Shown piece by piece: positions 51,325 to 59,070 of a DNA stretch of 64,000 nt (its first letter is position 1; each line of letters opens with the position of its first letter). Under the pieces are notes generated by a model, which saw only the letters and a list, made by a program, of their open reading frames with translations, searched no databases and had not been told where the DNA came from. Both the position numbers and the translations under genes were made by a program. The stretch spans positions 62,001 to 126,000 of IMG/VR virus record IMGVR_UViG_3300046536_000256, one strand, 5' to 3'.

Positions 51325-51830
51325 GCGGCTCCGTTTAGTTTCTCAGGTGGCAAAGACCACACGAGGTTGTCGGTCTCGAAGTGGGCCTTGTTGTTGTCTT
51401 TGTGGGTCACGATCAAGTCTTTAGGGTGACTCCCCTTCAGGCTCTCAGGGATCGGCACAAAGCCACAAGCAATTGCGCGGTGGATGGTCAGTGGTTCAGG
51501 CTTTCGTTGGATGTTCACCACGATGTGGGGGTACCCGCTGGAATCAAGACTCCACTCAACAAATTTTGGGTCAGTGGTATTGCGCATATTTACCACTCGG
51601 CCTTTGTTACTGATGAAGTAAAGGTAAGGGGCTACCTTCACAGCCGCTCCAGGTACTGTCAGAGCCGCTTCATGTCGCCAGTAGACCAAGGGGAGGAACA
51701 TCTCAAACGTATCGTCCTTAGCAAGCTTAGCCGCTAACCGATCGGCAATAATACCGACGTTGAAAGGGTACTCGAGTTCACGGTACGCTTTCATGTCATG
51801 AGTAGTCAGTGCAGTTTCTAGAAATTCCAT
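51321..51830 (-). CDS. Truncated/degenerate HNH endonuclease homolog (paralog of 55980..56921)
   Basis: Shares LEYPFN, FIS.KGRV, HRA.AC.FVP and HPKDL.V.H.D..K..F...NL.W, then ends. Confidence 0.75.
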   Translation of the reverse strand: MEFLETALTTHDMKAYRELEYPFNVGIIADRLAAKLAKDDTFEMFLPLVYWRHEAALTVPGAAVKVAPYLYFISNKGRVVNMRNTTDPKFVEWSLDSSGYPHIVVNIQRKPEPLTIHRAIACGFVPIPESLKGSHPKDLIVTHKDNNKAHFETDNLVWSLPPEKLNGAA

Positions 51831-53648: not shown

Positions 53649-55961
53649 CTACTGGAGTGCGCAGTTAGAGTCAATCACTTTGAAGGTCTTCTTCTTGGGT
53701 TCGAAGGCGACCTCGCGTTTGCGGAAGTACTCTTTATGTTTCGGCTGGCTTATGCAAACGCCAAACACAAACCGCGGTGTAATCCGACCCCCGAATTCAT
53801 TCCGGTTAGCCAAATCACGTAAGCGGCCAATCATCTGCTTATTACGTTGAGTAGACCCCACCGTATGGAAACAAATGGTTGTTACCAGTCCAGGAATGTC
53901 CTTACCGGTACCGCAGCTGCCTGGCGTGGTTATAACGTGTTCGTGCCGTAGATATTTAGTTTTTCCTTCCTTATCCTTTGACTTGGTATCGTCGCCGGTA
54001 AAGGTCACGAAGTCACCCCCTGGATATTCCTTCTGGAACATCTCAAGCATCACCTCGCACATGCTGACCCTGGAGAAGAAGAAGAGGCACTTAGTGCCAG
54101 GCTCCCGGATGTCGAGGTAATAATCCTCGTACGCCTTCTTAGCCACGTCAAAGTAGAACTGCGTGACGGCACGGTTCCCCAGAATGCTCTGCTCCCAGGT
54201 TAGGTCATTGTAACTACCGAACTGCTGGGTCTTCAGGTTATACCGACGCGGGTTAATGTCGTAAAGGTACGCGACGATGTCGATATAGTTCTCAGGCTCC
54301 GGTTCCTTAAGCCGGATGTGGTATGGGAACATGACCTTGTAGATCTTGTTAATGAACGGGTCATCGGCAGCCAGTGTGGCGGACAGCACCAACACTTTGG
54401 CAAAGTTACCGTACATCAGCGAGATGCACACCTGGTGGATCGCCTCGTGCCCTTCGTCAATGATCCTGAGACCACACTCAAGGCTTTCGAAGATCTTGTC
54501 CAACCCAGGAGTCGACGGATCCTTCTTCTCGTTGCGCAGGTGTACGTCAATGCGCGTCATCGGCACAATGATTACTTTAGGGTCAACCGTCCCCTTCAGC
54601 ATCAACTCCTGCAACTTCTCGAGATCCTGTTCCCACACCAACACATCAGACGGTTGCAAGTCGATGATGTTACCCAACGCAGTGATCCAGGTGGTGATGT
54701 ACCGTGGCTGGATGGTGATCAGGGTTCGCTTGCCCATCAACAACATCGTCCGAAGACCCATGTAGGTGTTGTGCGTAACGAGGTAGTCCTTGATCACAAA
54801 GCAACGACTGTCATGCTCTACGGCAATGCAGGTGGTCTCAACCGGCCGGTCAATCTCAATGCGGTTAATCCGCAATGCCAGATCACGGTTCTCCTTATCC
54901 CATAATGCTTCCACCTTCTCTTGGACGGTGAACAAGACATCTGGGGTTCGGTGCGTGATAACAACCCAGTTATCGCTATCGGAGTAGTGGGCCTTTGCAA
55001 CACCCCCTATGCTCCACACCAGATCGCGAACCATCTTGGCGCTGGTGCCGTAGTCCGACTGATACAGAATCGACCCATCACCCTGTGGTTCACCTGTAGC
55101 GTCCAACAAACCACGCAGCAAGCCCATCCGCTGAGAGTGTGAGCCCTCAAGGTATTTCTCGCCGAGGAACCGATCTGTTTGACCGATCAGGTAGGGGTCG
55201 ACTATATCTGCGCGTTCCGGATTGCGTTCACTGGCGGTTAAAGGAATGCGCCAGACTTTATCCGCCGGACTGTCCACCAACTCCTGTGTAGTCATGACCT
55301 CCCAATCAGTTTGGCCATCTTGCCGAACTTCCCACTGGTGTTCAGGGCAAGCCACAGCTGTTCTGCCGTCCTCGAAGGTCAGCTTATATGTCGGTGTCAC
55401 CCCTTGAGGGAAAACCCCTGTGACGTACGTGTGGGAGCCGTCAGGAGCCATCACAAGGTCATTAACCTTGATCTGCCCGATTGGCTTCCAACCTTTAGCT
55501 GTTCTGACCGGTGTATCGTTGGCCAGTGCCTTACCAAACCCCGTTGATGCGTTGTTGACCTTAATGGGACCGGGGGCTAGTTGGTACTTGACCCATTCAT
55601 CCTGACCAGGGCGGGTGTTCTCGTAACCTTTGTTGAACTTAAAGGGTACGTTCTTACCGACCAACTCAGGTTCTTCAAGGAGGTCCACTCGGCTCTGGTT
55701 GTAACCCCGATACTGGGCGAACTCCAGAAACTCCTTCAAGAGACTCGAAGGGATACGGTACTCACTCTTATCGAAGTTAGACCGTGCGAATACATGGGTG
55801 ACCTTGTACGCTGTTCGGTTGGTGCCGGGTACAACTACTTTCCCTGTTTTGTACAGGTTAGCCCGACAGAAAGGCATAATGACTTGCGCGTAAAACTCTC
55901 CGTAGAACCCAAAGATTCGTAGGTAGTTATGGGCACGACTGATGGTCGCCACGTGTCTCAT
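53649..55961 (-). CDS. SF2 DEAH-box helicase (gp75-like) containing an intein; 516 aa after splicing
   Basis: Walker A STGFGK|T split by the intein; DEGH, LSAT, GTGKDIPGL and QMIGRLR motifs. Confidence 0.9.
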   Translation of the reverse strand: MRHVATISRAHNYLRIFGFYGEFYAQVIMPFCRANLYKTGKVVVPGTNRTAYKVTHVFARSNFDKSEYRIPSSLLKEFLEFAQYRGYNQSRVDLLEEPELVGKNVPFKFNKGYENTRPGQDEWVKYQLAPGPIKVNNASTGFGKALANDTPVRTAKGWKPIGQIKVNDLVMAPDGSHTYVTGVFPQGVTPTYKLTFEDGRTAVACPEHQWEVRQDGQTDWEVMTTQELVDSPADKVWRIPLTASERNPERADIVDPYLIGQTDRFLGEKYLEGSHSQRMGLLRGLLDATGEPQGDGSILYQSDYGTSAKMVRDLVWSIGGVAKAHYSDSDNWVVITHRTPDVLFTVQEKVEALWDKENRDLALRINRIEIDRPVETTCIAVEHDSRCFVIKDYLVTHNTYMGLRTMLLMGKRTLITIQPRYITTWITALGNIIDLQPSDVLVWEQDLEKLQELMLKGTVDPKVIIVPMTRIDVHLRNEKKDPSTPGLDKIFESLECGLRIIDEGHEAIHQVCISLMYGNFAKVLVLSATLAADDPFINKIYKVMFPYHIRLKEPEPENYIDIVAYLYDINPRRYNLKTQQFGSYNDLTWEQSILGNRAVTQFYFDVAKKAYEDYYLDIREPGTKCLFFFSRVSMCEVMLEMFQKEYPGGDFVTFTGDDTKSKDKEGKTKYLRHEHVITTPGSCGTGKDIPGLVTTICFHTVGSTQRNKQMIGRLRDLANRNEFGGRITPRFVFGVCISQPKHKEYFRKREVAFEPKKKTFKVIDSNCALQ
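54768..55529 (-). mobile_element. Class-3 intein (254 aa) with a degenerate LAGLIDADG remnant
   Basis: Starts ALANDTPV (Ala1) and ends YLVTHN|T; WCT triad (PEHQW, TTCIAV, VTHN); a single LLRGLLDATG motif. Confidence 0.9.
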
Positions 55962-55979
55962 GGTAACCCCCTAAATTTT

Positions 55980-56921
55980 TCAAAGCGGTATCCTTTCGAA
56001 GGTATACCCCTTATAGCTGGATCTCTTTTGAGCGATAACATCGGCCACTAACCTTCTGTGAAAGTTCATATTCTTTAATTCTTTTCGCCCAACTATAACT
56101 ATTTGCTCTCCAGTTTCTATATGTGTCGCAAGTAGCTTCGTTGTGACGTAAGGATTTATTGAAAAGAGGTTATTCTTGACCTCGTCATTTAAGCCATGGG
56201 GAAGGGTCTTTAGATCTTCCGGAGTCGCCATCGAGAACTGACAACTCTTATGTTTTCTAAAGCCGGATCCGACTGATCCAAATATTCTTGTGGCGTCGAA
56301 ACCGGAAGCTTCCGCCTCCTTCTTCCCACATATAACAAAGGAATAACCCTTAAACTCTCCAGCCACTACAACACCCTTAACAGGCTTCACTGCGTAATGG
56401 TCGATTCCTACCGGAGATATGAGTAGTCCTGTTTCTCTGGCGTGCCGCACGTTACCTTGTCCAGTAGTCCACTCTAGGTTGAACAAATCGAAATTACTTT
56501 TGACGCCGTCCATGTGGTTGACTTGGAGGTCTTTAGGATGACCTGGTATCTCGAGCGGGACAAATGAGCAGGCTAAGGCCCTATGGAGAGGAACCTTATT
56601 TCTCTGCTTCCCGTTATCTACCATCAGCCTAGGGTATTCCTCCATCATCCACGGTATCAAACGCCCGGTATGTTTATTCTTCTTAAAGGACCAGACTCTC
56701 CCCTTGCTGCTAATAAACATTTTGTACGGTTTAAGAACCTGTTTATCGATGTAGCCATAATAAACAAACGGGACCCACACTTCGTACTCTGGATCCAGTT
56801 CCAGCTTTGCTTTCAAAGCCTTATGCAAAATAGAAAGGTTAAACGGGTATTCAAGTGAGTAATATAGGTTTAAGTCTTGCTCACTTAGTAAATCCTCGGG
56901 TTTATTTGAACTTTCATTCAT
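55980..56921 (-). CDS. Free-standing HNH homing endonuclease
   Basis: LHRALA..F...VNHMDGVKSN...NLEW.T...NVRHA; AT-richer than its neighbours; ATG 56921 has an AAGGA SD (alternative ATG 56939). Confidence 0.9.
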   Translation of the reverse strand: MNESSNKPEDLLSEQDLNLYYSLEYPFNLSILHKALKAKLELDPEYEVWVPFVYYGYIDKQVLKPYKMFISSKGRVWSFKKNKHTGRLIPWMMEEYPRLMVDNGKQRNKVPLHRALACSFVPLEIPGHPKDLQVNHMDGVKSNFDLFNLEWTTGQGNVRHARETGLLISPVGIDHYAVKPVKGVVVAGEFKGYSFVICGKKEAEASGFDATRIFGSVGSGFRKHKSCQFSMATPEDLKTLPHGLNDEVKNNLFSINPYVTTKLLATHIETGEQIVIVGRKELKNMNFHRRLVADVIAQKRSSYKGYTFERIPL

Positions 56922-56932
56922 AACGGTATCCT

Positions 56933-56959
56933 TAACCATCTCGATTGTCGAGATGGTTA
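56933..56959 (-). promoter_or_regulatory. Perfect 12-bp hairpin over the HNH translation-initiation region
   Basis: taaccatctcga ttg tcgagatggtta. Confidence 0.8.
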
Positions 56960-56968
56960 TTTAGGGAG

Positions 56969-56995
56969 TTAGTAGATTCTGGCAACGTGGCGCAT
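56969..56995 (-). pseudogene. Relic 5' end of the SF2 helicase gene / uORF MRHVARIY*
   Basis: AGAGG-8nt-ATG CGC CAC GTT GCC AGA ATC TAC TAA; matches the helicase start MRHVATI at 6 of 7 residues. Confidence 0.8.
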
Positions 56996-57009
56996 TGTAG
57001 CAGCCTCTT

Positions 57010-57041
57010 AACAAAATAAACGAGAACCCCGAAGGGTTCCC
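57010..57041 (-). terminator. Terminator after the nvRNAP beta' gene
   Basis: gaaccc cgaa gggttc with minus-strand tail TTTATTTTG. Confidence 0.7.
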
Positions 57042-57054
57042 GCCATCGGGTGTG

Positions 57055-59070
57055 TTAAGACGCCCCCAACGCCCAAAACGCTTCGAGTACCGAACCTTGA
57101 CGGTCAGTGGTCATGAAGGTGCGCGGGTCGTTAAGAACGTTCTGTTGTTTCTCAAAGATCAACAACCCGCCTCCGCCCCGGCTGGTGATGCAGTTAATGA
57201 AGCTGGCGAAATACTTATCACCAGAACCATTCGCTAGGGCGTAGTTCAGATTGTTTGGATCTCTGGCCAAGCAGCAGTACAGCAAGGATTCGATGTGAAC
57301 CGCGTTGATACCCTTGATCTCTTGGTTAATGAGCGTCCAGAATTCTGATTGCACTTCGCCAAAGACTTTAGGAGTCACCACTTGGTTACGCCATGCGGTA
57401 TTGCGCTTGTTAAAGGTCATGAAGTTTTCCACACGAGCCCGGTGCATATCCAAATCTTCCCGAGTATAAGGAAGAGCGAACATCGGAGCCAATGTGTTCC
57501 AATCCGACAGGTCGATGGAGATGAAGCGTTTGTCCACCGTGTTCCAACCCTTGTCCAACACAAACTTCAAGAAGTCCAAGGAGAAACGAGCATTACGCGA
57601 CGACACCGAGGTGGTAGCCGAATGCTGCTGCGTAGTTTTGCCACCCATCATGATGTCTTCCACTTGGTAGCGGAAGGTAACGTCGGAGAAGTACGGGAGT
57701 TTATCCAGCCCAACGTCGTCCAATACATCGAGCGACTTCAGGTCGGACAGATCCTTAACAATAGACGACTTCAGAATCAACTCTGAACCCGGAACGCAGA
57801 TCTCAGCCTTCAGGAAGATTTCGTCCCCGTTGGTGTAGATGATATCCTTGTCCCGCATGTGAGGCACGAACTTCCGCGAGGTTGCGTTGCGGATGTAGTG
57901 CTTAGTACTGAGCATTTTCTGCCCCATCGGGTTACATAAGGTAGTGCCCGAGTACATTCCCACGTTTGCGTCTTTCATCATCATGACGTTAAACGGGATG
58001 GTCGACTTCATTTTCCCATAGCAACGGCCGCACGGCTGGCCTGGGTTGTGAGAGTTACAGAACGCTATGCTGCGGAAGGTGATGACGTCACCCGCCTTGA
58101 TCGTGTTCACGTTGCGTTGGTCAATCAGCACCGAGGACCCGTCAGCCATGATCATGTATTTGCCCATCAAGGACAAAGCCATTTCCATGTTCAGGATCTT
58201 CATTGGAACGCCTACAGTAGTGCCGCAGTCGTTCATGTGCAGGATGCTGGACAACGGCGCCGACAGCAAGTGAATCTTGCGGTGGAACCACTCAGCGTCC
58301 TTCAGACCTTTACCGTTGTTGATCAGCGATTTCCCCGAGGAGTTACGTTCCCCCAAGGAATCCGCTAAGTTGGTGATACCGTGTGCATACGGCACGTTAA
58401 CCGCATTCGGGAAGATGGTGTTGTTCAAGTCAAACACCGAACCACGAATGATCGTCGTCTGGAATGCTTGGTTGACGCTCACGCCACCGGTACGCGCCAG
58501 CAGAGCCATGGTGTTAGTGCTCAGACTTTCCGCTTCACGCAGGTAGGTGCTGAACTCTTTCTCGCCATCGTCAATGCTGACTTCATGCTTCAGGATCCGG
58601 TCACGGATATCCATGATCCCGATGTCTTCCATCAGCTCCGCCACCGACTCAGCCGTAGCTGAAATCACCGACGCCTCACTCATCACCACAATCATGTTGT
58701 TGAGTTTGGTTTGCCAGATGTGCACCTGACGCTTGATGCTGTCGGTTTCTACCGGGTCATCGATCTCCGGCATGACCTTTTCCAACACCCAGTTAACCGG
58801 GATCGCTAGAGTGTCATCATTGTAAACAACCTCCTTATGCTCCGGGTTGGTGTTGGATGGGATCAGTTCATCAATCGAGTACGGTACATCGTTGTACTTG
58901 CGGTGAACGATTAAGCCTTGCCAGGTCAACATCATGGCGAACAGGCAAGACAGTGTCTTCTTGCCTTCGTCGTCCACCACTTCCACTTGATGTCGGAAAC
59001 CACGACAGCGGATGATGTCTTCCTCAGGGAGGTTGGCCCACTCACGCAGGCTAATTTGCATGCAGCCCAT
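57055..59070 (-). CDS. Non-virion RNA polymerase beta'-like subunit, C-terminal part (gp74-like)
   Basis: NQ..Q..IIRG, bridge-helix-like L.DAEWFHRK, DCGT, C.....PCGRCYG and trigger-loop Q.MLSTKH. Confidence 0.9.
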   Translation of the reverse strand: MGCMQISLREWANLPEEDIIRCRGFRHQVEVVDDEGKKTLSCLFAMMLTWQGLIVHRKYNDVPYSIDELIPSNTNPEHKEVVYNDDTLAIPVNWVLEKVMPEIDDPVETDSIKRQVHIWQTKLNNMIVVMSEASVISATAESVAELMEDIGIMDIRDRILKHEVSIDDGEKEFSTYLREAESLSTNTMALLARTGGVSVNQAFQTTIIRGSVFDLNNTIFPNAVNVPYAHGITNLADSLGERNSSGKSLINNGKGLKDAEWFHRKIHLLSAPLSSILHMNDCGTTVGVPMKILNMEMALSLMGKYMIMADGSSVLIDQRNVNTIKAGDVITFRSIAFCNSHNPGQPCGRCYGKMKSTIPFNVMMMKDANVGMYSGTTLCNPMGQKMLSTKHYIRNATSRKFVPHMRDKDIIYTNGDEIFLKAEICVPGSELILKSSIVKDLSDLKSLDVLDDVGLDKLPYFSDVTFRYQVEDIMMGGKTTQQHSATTSVSSRNARFSLDFLKFVLDKGWNTVDKRFISIDLSDWNTLAPMFALPYTREDLDMHRARVENFMTFNKRNTAWRNQVVTPKVFGEVQSEFWTLINQEIKGINAVHIESLLYCCLARDPNNLNYALANGSGDKYFASFINCITSRGGGGLLIFEKQQNVLNDPRTFMTTDRQGSVLEAFWALGAS

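What the first reader, a model, noticed from the sequence alone, without database searches (positions are those of the whole stretch)
56921..56995. uORF plus perfect hairpin as a translational switch on the endonuclease
Seen on the mRNA: uORF stop, then CUCCCUAAA, then UAACCAUCUCGA-CAA-UCGAGAUGGUUA, then AGGAUACCGUU-AUG. The stem buries the first in-frame AUG (56939) and abuts the AAGGA SD of the second (56921). CCU can additionally pair with AGG across a 3-nt bulge. The uORF stop lies 9 nt before the stem. Established: RBS-sequestering hairpins delay HEG expression in T4-like phages (for example I-TevI). Inference: ribosomes terminating on the relic helicase start could melt the stem, coupling nuclease output to the helicase's ancestral initiation signal.
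Basis: partly seen in the sequence, partly recalled or inferred. Interest (0 to 1): 0.7.

Follow-up and report, generated by a model that had tools for sequence, protein, structure and literature searches.

The report
Hairpin-gated homing endonuclease leader
A mobile endonuclease gene that landed in the first codons of a jumbo phage's helicase gene carries a conserved RNA hairpin beside its ribosome-binding site, a known way of keeping such selfish genes quiet; the short upstream reading frame is the helicase's abandoned original start.

Summary
The window is part of a 233-kb EL-like jumbo phage. On the minus strand the order is RNAP beta-subunit gene, intrinsic terminator, 8-codon ORF, perfect 12-bp hairpin, HNH homing-endonuclease gene (HEG), helicase gene. 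Ten related phages lack the HEG and start their helicase exactly where the short ORF starts, so it is the relic helicase start. A second, diverged HEG copy (L013; 76% nt identity, dN/dS 0.10) keeps the hairpin through two fully compensatory base-pair changes. It lacks the first AUG, so the HEG starts at 56921. A distant relative (L029, different insertion site, no upstream short ORF) has the same leader plan, with a strong early-promoter motif inside the 5' arm. In the window that promoter core is vestigial. The hairpin therefore came with the HEG and resembles the T4-type hairpin control of I-TevI, mobE and seg43(25). The proposed coupling to the short ORF is not supported. A terminating ribosome reaches only the base of the stem, freeing at most a 3-bp clamp on the Shine-Dalgarno, and not in L013. 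No RNA data exist. Verdict: real, conserved and probably regulatory; a new variant of a known kind.

The parts
57009..57044 (-). Intrinsic terminator after the RNAP beta-subunit gene: stem-loop 57044-57019 plus a T-rich tail. It is ancestral and is present in all HEG-less relatives.
   Evidence: Terminator scan; fold; conserved with compensatory changes in L003-L007
57004..57009 (-). Shine-Dalgarno AAGAGG of the ancestral helicase start, which now serves the short ORF
   Evidence: Identical to the SD of the functional helicase start in L003 and L005
56969..56995 (-). Short ORF MRHVARIY-stop, the relic of the helicase start. Its first 16 nt are identical to the L003 helicase.
   Evidence: L013 has the equivalent MRHVATIH-stop with TAA at the same place.
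56956..56965 (-). Vestigial early-promoter-like core CCTAAATAAC. Its CCU (56965-56963) is the 5' half of the SD clamp, and its 3' end (56959-56956) forms the base of the stem.
   Evidence: Matrix score -11.4 bits, against 25.3 bits for the homologous site in L029; leader comparison
56933..56959 (-). Perfect 12-bp hairpin with a 3-nt loop: 5' arm 56959-56948, loop 56947-56945, 3' arm 56944-56933
   Evidence: Two compensatory pair changes in L013.
56929..56933 (-). Shine-Dalgarno AAGGA of the HEG. AGG (56932-56930) pairs with CCU in the MFE structure.
   Evidence: the clamp is worth -2.4 kcal/mol
55980..56921 (-). HNH homing endonuclease gene, 313 aa, starting at the second AUG (56921)
   Evidence: Pfam HNH_3; PHROG HNH endonuclease families; called as 313 aa; dN/dS 0.10 against L013; absent from 10 relatives
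56856..56878 (-). Strong early-promoter-like site inside the HEG ORF, 54 nt after the start codon (core CCTATATTAC at 56868-56859). It points toward the helicase.
   Evidence: 20.5-21.7 bits although left out of matrix training, against a shuffle maximum of 15; conserved in L013 at 17.9 bits
55967..55971 (-). New Shine-Dalgarno GGGGG for the re-created helicase start, in the 18-nt gap after the HEG stop codon
   Evidence: GGGGG is also present in L013
53649..55961 (-). Helicase gene with a replacement 5' end carried by the cassette. Codons 2-10 differ from L003 at about 9 of 30 positions, all synonymous. The gene contains an intein-like Hint insert.

Best explanation
The hairpin is part of the leader that the homing endonuclease gene (HEG) brought with it. 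It is an RNA stem-loop that ends at the Shine-Dalgarno, and a short CCU:AGG clamp ties the Shine-Dalgarno purines to the sequence just 5' of the stem.

The ancestral form of this leader is seen in L029. There an early (virion-RNAP type) promoter core lies inside the 5' arm. Transcripts reading through from upstream genes fold the hairpin and are poorly translated. Transcripts from the element's own promoter lack the 5' arm and the CCU. This is the same logic as T4 I-TevI, segB and Aeh1 mobE.

In this window the promoter core has decayed, so full-length HEG mRNA most likely comes only from read-through of the RNAP-operon terminator. On those transcripts the hairpin and clamp hold HEG translation low.

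The 8-codon ORF is a by-product of insertion. The cassette entered the first codons of the helicase gene and supplied a new Shine-Dalgarno and start for it, leaving the old start stranded.

Shown: the anatomy, the relic origin of the short ORF, compensatory conservation of the stem, and the homologous leader in L029.

Inferred: that the structure acts at the RNA level, that it represses translation, and where transcripts start.
For: - Stability: the hairpin is exceptionally stable for its composition.
- Not a terminator: it has no T-tail on the coding strand, is 41% GC, and lies 95 nt beyond a gene that already has its own terminator.
- Compensatory conservation: L013 is an independent HEG copy with saturated synonymous divergence (dS 1.39, dN/dS 0.10). 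All four stem substitutions form two compensatory Watson-Crick pairs. The chance of that under random substitution is 0.09-0.7%.
- Homologous leader in L029 (HEG 36% identical, different neighbours): core CCUACAUUACC overlaps the 5' arm of a 15-bp hairpin, CCU pairs with the GGG of the SD, and then comes CGGGAUACUGUUAUG against the window's AGGAUACCGUUAUG. The upper stems are unrelated in sequence but still paired. The U-to-A change in the window's core is matched by A-to-U in the 3' arm.
- RNA rather than operator: stem length and loop size differ between the window and L029, which fits an RNA structure better than a fixed protein operator.
- SD pairing: the SD purines are predicted paired in all three leaders.
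- Promoter motif: it is real and genome-wide, with about 22 sites, all on the coding strand and 40-80 nt before start codons. It fits the described class of AT-rich early promoters centred near -10 (PMC7598289). L029's site scores 25.3 bits and the window's scores -11.4.
- Modelled start inside the hairpin: this frees the window's SD completely, 0.30 to 0.99.
- Precedent: PMC2988022.
Against: - No transcript or translation data exist. No RNA run was listed.
- The 12-bp stem does not itself contain the SD. Occlusion rests on a 3-bp clamp worth only -2.4 kcal/mol.
- In L013 the SD is weaker (UGGA) and pairs with a different partner.
- Only three leaders carry the strong hairpin. Other family members and ordinary promoters show only background-level stems.
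- Start-inside-hairpin modelling does not free the SD in L013, and in L029 it mainly frees the AUG.
- With the promoter vestigial, the 'switch' half of the T4 logic is missing here. Yet dN/dS of 0.10 says the protein is still made by some route.
- Compensatory changes in a short palindrome can also arise by templated (quasi-palindrome) mutation without selection.
Confidence: 0.5

Rival explanations
1. Ribosomes translating the relic helicase start terminate 9 nt before the stem and open the structure, so HEG translation is coupled to, and depends on, the ancestral helicase initiation signal.
For: - The relic initiation region is identical to the functional helicase one in L003 and L005, so it is probably translated.
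- ORF length and stop position are the same in both HEG-bearing genomes.
- A terminating ribosome would cover CCU and free the AGG of the window's SD: P unpaired rises from 0.06 to about 0.43.
- In L013 the SD's predicted partner AUCCA lies inside the short ORF.
- With the element's own promoter vestigial, some route to HEG expression on read-through mRNA is needed.
Against: - The footprint geometry leaves the 12-bp stem intact in both copies, and there is no SD gain in L013.
- The stop codon is 35 nt from the SD and 47 nt from the AUG, with a -17 kcal/mol stem between them. That is far from classical termination-reinitiation distances.
- The shared ORF length is explained by common descent from one insertion junction.
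- The hairpin module exists in L029 without any short ORF.
Confidence: 0.15
2. The hairpin is an insulator or stabiliser rather than a repressor. A self-contained stem immediately 5' of the ribosome-binding site would protect the mRNA from 5' decay or processing. It would also shield the initiation region of a mobile gene from misfolding with whatever upstream sequence it lands next to.
For: - The stem stops at the SD rather than covering it.
- The same placement is seen in L029.
- The review describes the same placement for seg43(25) and says its effect is undetermined (PMC2988022).
- The element sits in at least two different genomic contexts.
Against: - The CCU:RGG pairing with the SD recurs in the window and in L029.
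- In L029 the promoter lies inside the 5' arm, so own-promoter transcripts would lack the supposed protective stem.
Confidence: 0.15
3. The palindrome acts at the DNA level. It could be a binding site for the endonuclease or a regulator, by analogy with I-TevI autorepression at an operator resembling its homing site. It could instead be a scar of the original insertion, such as a fold-back repair product.
For: - The structure is a perfect DNA palindrome.
- In L013 the 5' arm is identical over 11 nt to helicase codons 11-14, close to the insertion point (6 of 5000 shuffles).
- It overlaps a promoter-like core.
Against: - The compensatory changes lie in the upper stem, and arm length and loop size differ between the window and L029. 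That does not fit a fixed dimeric operator.
- The helicase match is absent from the window copy and was noticed post hoc.
- A neutral scar would not be kept perfectly paired at saturated synonymous divergence.
Confidence: 0.08
4. The hairpin is a functionless leftover of the ancestral promoter-in-hairpin leader, kept so far only by short divergence time or by templated mutation within the palindrome.
For: - The promoter half of the module has decayed.
- The leader and the first 180 nt of the ORF are much less diverged than the rest of the gene, about 92% against 60-65%, so this segment may be younger.
Against: Four of four stem substitutions are compensatory, and the stem stayed paired while the overlapping promoter core changed.
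Confidence: 0.07

Closest known systems
Hairpin-regulated homing endonucleases of T4-type phages (I-TevI, I-TevII, I-TevIII, segB, Aeh1 mobE), reviewed in PMC2988022
   Same: - A phage HEG sits on polycistronic read-through transcripts.
- A stable hairpin lies at its ribosome-binding site.
- In the ancestral form (L029) a promoter is placed inside the hairpin, so that own-promoter transcripts lack the inhibitory arm.
   Different: - The host is an EL-like jumbo phage with its own multisubunit RNAPs.
- The embedded promoter is of the early virion-RNAP motif class, not a T4 late promoter.
- The stem abuts the SD rather than enclosing it.
- In this window the embedded promoter is vestigial.
- Nothing has been tested experimentally.
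seg43(25) of Aeromonas phage 25 (PMC2988022)
   Same: [quoted passage not shown]
- The HEG is inserted in an essential replication gene.
   Different: - The enzyme is a GIY-YIG seg-type, not HNH.
- That insertion splits the polymerase gene in two, whereas this one replaces only the gene's start.
- No 3-bp SD clamp is described there.
Leader-peptide translational coupling in plasmid replication control (R1 tap-repA, ColIb-P9 repY-repZ). This is from my own knowledge and was not checked in the paper library.
   Same: A short upstream ORF lies ahead of a structure that hides the downstream ribosome-binding site.
   Different: In those systems the leader's stop lies within or next to the inhibitory structure, so termination opens it. 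Here the stop is 9 nt before a 12-bp stem and 35 nt from the SD, and the ORF is an insertion relic.
HEG insertions that fragment host genes, for example Aeh1 nrdA split by mobE (PMC3045599, found)
   Same: A free-standing HNH HEG sits inside an essential phage gene, and the host gene's function is preserved by signals associated with the insertion.
   Different: Here only the first 7 or so codons are stranded. The cassette supplies a complete duplicate start, so the helicase is not split into two polypeptides.

Membership tests
Hairpin-regulated phage homing endonuclease (T4 I-TevI / mobE type) | The gene is a mobile homing endonuclease | tested here: met
   - HNH_3 and PHROG HNH endonuclease matches.
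- Absent from 10 close relatives at this locus.
- Present in two different flank backgrounds.
- dN/dS of 0.10.
Hairpin-regulated phage homing endonuclease (T4 I-TevI / mobE type) | A stable RNA structure sequesters the ribosome-binding site | tested here: inconclusive
   The 12-bp stem ends at the SD. Only a 3-bp clamp (-2.4 kcal/mol) pairs the AGG. The SD purines are predicted paired in the window, L013 and L029, but with a different partner in L013.
Hairpin-regulated phage homing endonuclease (T4 I-TevI / mobE type) | A promoter lies inside the hairpin, so that its transcripts cannot form the structure | tested here: not met
   The window's core scores -11.4 bits and L013's scores -5.1. The feature is met in the homologous L029 leader at 25.3 bits.
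Hairpin-regulated phage homing endonuclease (T4 I-TevI / mobE type) | Translation is repressed on read-through transcripts and relieved on promoter-proximal ones | not testable with these tools
   No RNA run was listed. Only thermodynamic modelling is available, and it gives mixed results.
Leader-peptide (upstream ORF) translational coupling | The upstream ORF has a working initiation region | tested here: met
   Its SD, spacer and first 16 nt are identical to the helicase start of L003 and L005. That it functions is an inference from this identity.
Leader-peptide (upstream ORF) translational coupling | A terminating ribosome physically opens the structure that hides the downstream ribosome-binding site | tested here: not met
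   With footprint edges of +11 to +15, the stem stays fully paired. The clamp opens only in the window, and there is no gain in L013.
Leader-peptide (upstream ORF) translational coupling | The ORF and the structure are conserved together as one module | tested here: not met
   L029 has the hairpin leader and no short ORF. Its upstream gene stops 24 nt before the stem. The window and L013 share the ORF by descent from one insertion junction.
Intrinsic (rho-independent) terminator | A GC-rich stem followed by a T/U tract on the transcribed strand, shortly after a gene's end | tested here: not met
   The hairpin is 41% GC, is followed by AGGAUACCG, and lies 95 nt after a gene that has its own terminator. 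The genome's real terminators sit 4-16 nt after stop codons with T-rich tails.
Known RNA family (Rfam) | A match to a curated covariance model | tested here: not met
   No match with E up to 1 in 55900-57150.

The most novel reading that the evidence does not exclude
The cassette may be a self-contained 'gene-start replacement' element that takes over expression of an essential host gene. It brings three things: a hairpin-gated leader for its own nuclease, a strong early-promoter site hidden inside the nuclease ORF that points at the helicase, and a new Shine-Dalgarno and start codon for the helicase. The ancestral helicase start is left as a translated decoy whose terminating ribosomes loosen the clamp on the nuclease's Shine-Dalgarno. 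Nuclease output would then track the old helicase signal, while the helicase itself runs on element-borne signals.
Probability: 0.12. Interest if true: 0.6.

Novelty: new variant of a known kind. Interest (0 to 1): 0.4.

Why it matters
Hairpin control of homing endonucleases has been worked out almost entirely in T4-like phages. This case suggests the same design, a promoter inside a hairpin at the ribosome-binding site, also exists in nucleus-forming-type jumbo phages that use their own RNA polymerases. It also shows what remains when the promoter half decays. In addition, it is a clean natural example of a selfish gene inserting into the first codons of an essential gene without harming it, because the cassette carries a replacement start and leaves a datable, translatable relic behind. 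The promoter matrix derived here is a practical by-product for annotating early genes in this uncultured phage group.

Tried and rejected
- **Working promoter inside the window's hairpin:** rejected. It scores -12.7 and -11.4 bits with two matrices, and the invariant upstream TTTCA is absent.
- **Terminator:** rejected.
- **Known RNA family:** none found.
- **More copies of the cassette:**
  - A 16-mer scan of viral contigs gave 8 chance hits.
  - A gapped core-to-start pattern gave 4 chance hits.
  - The metagenome scan with the protein found only relatives at 31-43% identity.
  - No near-identical phage record exists.
- **A strong leader hairpin as a family-wide HEG trait:** rejected by a control. 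Ordinary promoters and most relatives show only 4-9 bp stems, within background.
- **AUG 56939 as the start:** rejected. A 'VKD' resemblance to the paralogues' N-termini does not match the BLAST alignment, which places the homologous residues downstream of both AUGs.
- **RNA evidence:** no run was listed. The DNA runs hold only identical contigs, with no HEG-less or variant allele.
- **Automatic alignment of L029 with the window:** MAFFT misaligned the stems, so that comparison is by hand.
- **The tool's shuffle control for covariation:** it has no power with two sequences, so I replaced it with a substitution-placement simulation.
- **phiKZ-type late promoter TATG:** the only occurrence in the leader is the start codon itself, which would give an untranslatable transcript. 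I did not pursue this further.

Full report
**Observation**

- The upstream gene stops at 57057-57055, followed by a canonical terminator at 57044-57019 with a T-rich tail.
- AAGAGG lies at 57009-57004, and an 8-codon ORF (MRHVARIY) runs from 56995 to the TAA at 56971-56969.
- Nine nucleotides (CUCCCUAAA) follow, then a perfect 12-bp stem with a CAA loop (56959-56933).
- An AUG at 56939 lies in the 3' arm, AAGGA is at 56933-56929, and a second AUG is at 56921.
- ViennaRNA predicts the stem plus CCU:AGG across an AAA bulge: -19.4 kcal/mol, z = -4.8, with no shuffle as stable. The same fold appears in a 161-nt context.
- The stem alone is worth -17.0 kcal/mol and the 3-bp clamp adds -2.4.

**Context**

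The window is bases 62001-126000 of a 233-kb virus record with terminal repeats. The helicase is 46% identical to that of Pseudomonas phage EL and its relatives. The two upstream ORFs are RNAP beta-subunit pieces, the 313-aa ORF is an HNH endonuclease, and the 770-aa ORF is a DNA helicase with an intein-like insert. The DNA is held by rhizosphere metagenome runs, which may be its source.

**The short ORF is the ancestral helicase start**

Ten related viral contigs (57-95% protein identity in the RNAP gene) all lack the endonuclease gene. They place the helicase ATG 57-60 nt after the RNAP stop, which is exactly the position of the short ORF's ATG.
- The window is identical to L003 and L005 through the terminator, the SD and ATGCGCCACGTTGCCA, and then diverges abruptly.
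- The helicase now starts 1 kb downstream behind a new GGGGG Shine-Dalgarno. Its codons 2-10 differ from L003 at about 9 of 30 positions, all synonymous. The cassette therefore carried a replacement 5' end from another lineage.

**A second copy shows the stem is maintained**

The protein databases hold one close relative: P0002, 79% identical and also 313 aa. Its 2.2-kb contig, L013, has the same order of terminator, relic ORF (MRHVATIH, TAA at the same place), hairpin, HEG, 18-nt gap and helicase.
- The two HEGs are 76% identical in DNA, with dS 1.39 and dN/dS 0.10. Both encode a protein under purifying selection.
- L013's flanks are closest to the HEG-less L004, and the window's junction matches the HEG-less L003. 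HEG presence is therefore patchy across lineages.
- Within the stem there are four substitutions. They form two fully compensatory pairs, C-G to U-A and U-A to C-G. All shared pairs remain Watson-Crick.
- The tool's own shuffle control has no power with two rows. In a simulation, four randomly placed substitutions keep the stem fully Watson-Crick in only 0.09-0.7% of trials.
- L013 has no AUG at the position of 56939, and a 1-nt indel shifts that frame. The start is therefore 56921, as the gene callers chose.

**Not a terminator**

The genome has 27 perfect hairpins of 10 bp or more, against 0-4 in shuffles. Nearly all lie 4-16 nt after a stop codon, have GC-rich tops and are followed by T-rich tails. 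The HEG hairpin is 41% GC, has no T-tail on the coding strand, and lies 95 nt beyond a gene that already has a terminator. Rfam has no match.

**Where the hairpin came from**

While checking the leaders of distant HEG relatives I found a recurring motif that is also a genome-wide signal.
- The consensus is AAATTTCA(A/G)ACCTA(T/C)AT(T/C)ACT. About 22 strong sites all lie on the main coding strand, 40-80 nt before start codons.
- It is also used in related phages, including upstream of the RNAP operon.
- It fits the published description of jumbo-phage early promoters: an AT-rich conserved element of about 10 nt centred near -10 and read by the virion RNAP (PMC7598289).
- Several HEG relatives carry it 40-50 nt before their start codons.

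One of them, L029, has a leader that matches the window's piece by piece. Its HEG is 36% identical to the window's, it has unrelated neighbours, and it has no short ORF.
- The core CCUACAUUACC (25.3 bits) overlaps the 5' arm of a 15-bp hairpin.
- CCU 5' of the stem pairs with the GGG of the SD.
- The initiation region CGGGAUACUGUUAUG is nearly identical to the window's AGGAUACCGUUAUG.
- The upper stems share no sequence but both pair. The window's core differs by a U-to-A change that is matched by A-to-U in the 3' arm.

In the window and L013 the core (CCTAAATAAC) keeps 9 of 10 positions but lacks the invariant upstream TTTCA. It scores -11.4 and -5.1 bits, so it is vestigial.

A control limits the claim. 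Ordinary promoters and most other HEG leaders show only 4-9 bp stems, so the strong hairpin is specific to these three leaders.

**Testing the proposed coupling**

With the short ORF's stop in the A site, the spacer occupies +7 to +15 and the stem starts at +16.
- Folding with the footprint forced single-stranded (3' edge +11, +13 or +15) keeps all 12 bp in both copies.
- In the window only the clamp opens, with SD GG P unpaired rising from 0.06 to about 0.43. In L013 the SD re-pairs elsewhere.
- The stop codon is 35 nt from the SD with a -17 kcal/mol stem between them.

The hairpin also exists without any short ORF in L029. This makes termination-driven melting of the stem unlikely, although a modest effect through the clamp cannot be excluded.

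**Most likely mechanism**

The hairpin is an inherited HEG-leader element that limits translation of the nuclease on read-through transcripts. In its ancestral form an internal promoter bypassed it, which is the arrangement documented for I-TevI, I-TevII, I-TevIII, segB and mobE. The stem-abuts-RBS geometry matches that noted for seg43(25) (PMC2988022).

Modelled transcripts starting about 6 nt after the core give mixed results:
- In the window the SD is fully freed (0.30 to 0.99).
- In L029 the AUG is freed and the structure collapses from -38.6 to about -10 kcal/mol.
- In L013 the SD is not freed.

Because the window's promoter is vestigial, the nuclease is probably made at a low level from read-through mRNA. 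How the level needed for homing is reached is unknown.

All functional steps are inferred. No RNA run was listed, and the DNA runs show no variants.

**Rivals**
- A protective or insulating stem.
- A DNA-level role. This is hinted at by an 11-nt identity between L013's 5' arm and helicase codons 11-14 (6 of 5000 shuffles), but the match is absent from the window and was noticed post hoc.
- A decaying relic.

**Novelty**

The kind of control is known. The variant features are the jumbo-phage setting, the early-promoter class, the decayed promoter, the start-replacement insertion with a relic ORF, and a strong promoter-like site inside the HEG ORF pointing at the helicase.

Noticed in passing
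window 56856-56878 (-), core 56868-56859; L013 about 619-641: A strong match to the early-promoter motif lies inside the HEG ORF, 54 nt after its start codon (codons L-N-L-Y-Y-S). It scores 20.5-21.7 bits although it was left out of training, against a shuffle maximum of 15. It is conserved in L013. It cannot give full-length nuclease mRNA, but it would transcribe the helicase, which has no such motif of its own in HEG-less relatives.
   Followed up: partly
whole genome G000; in the window for example 61476, 11359, 5797 (-): A genome-wide promoter-like motif, AAATTTCA(A/G)ACCTA(T/C)AT(T/C)ACT. About 22 sites, all on the minus strand and 40-80 nt before start codons, including one ahead of the RNAP operon. 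The same motif appears in related contigs (L003, L028, L029).
   Followed up: partly
window 53649-55961 (-), residues about 140-400: The helicase carries an intein-like (Hint) insert. It is 770 aa here and 766-792 aa in L003-L007, but 510-513 aa in L008-L012. The insert region hits terminase, primase and loader PHROGs, as intein-bearing proteins do.
   Followed up: no
window about 51354-51818 (-); genome 202512-203252 (-): Two paralogues of the endonuclease. One is short (about 165-178 aa) and lies just downstream in the same gene block; it is also present in L003-L005. The other is longer and lies elsewhere, with its own promoter-motif site (25.5 bits) and a terminator hairpin after it.
   Followed up: partly
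L013 538-550 against helicase codons 11-14 (window 55931-55920 region): The 5' arm of the L013 hairpin (ATAACTACCTC) is identical over 11 nt to the conserved helicase sequence CAT AAC TAC CTC, close to the insertion point (6 of 5000 shuffles). The match is absent from the window copy. It could be microhomology used at the original insertion, or chance.
   Followed up: partly
window 56742-56921 (-) against the rest of the HEG ORF: The first 180 nt of the HEG ORF are 92% identical between the window and L013, while the middle of the gene is 60-65% identical. This could reflect a more recent exchange of the 5' segment, or constraint from signals embedded there.
   Followed up: no
window 57019-57044 (-) and the same place in L003-L007: The terminator between the RNAP gene and the helicase is conserved in position across relatives, with different but still complementary stem sequences. 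The helicase, and here the HEG, must therefore depend on read-through or on promoters of an unrecognised class.
   Followed up: no
genome 166382, 167586, 26919, 67797, 213481 (-): Five promoter-motif sites are followed 6-10 nt later by a shared box, AGTAAGTAATACAAAT, part of which is complementary to the promoter core. It may be a repeated leader or an operator.
   Followed up: no
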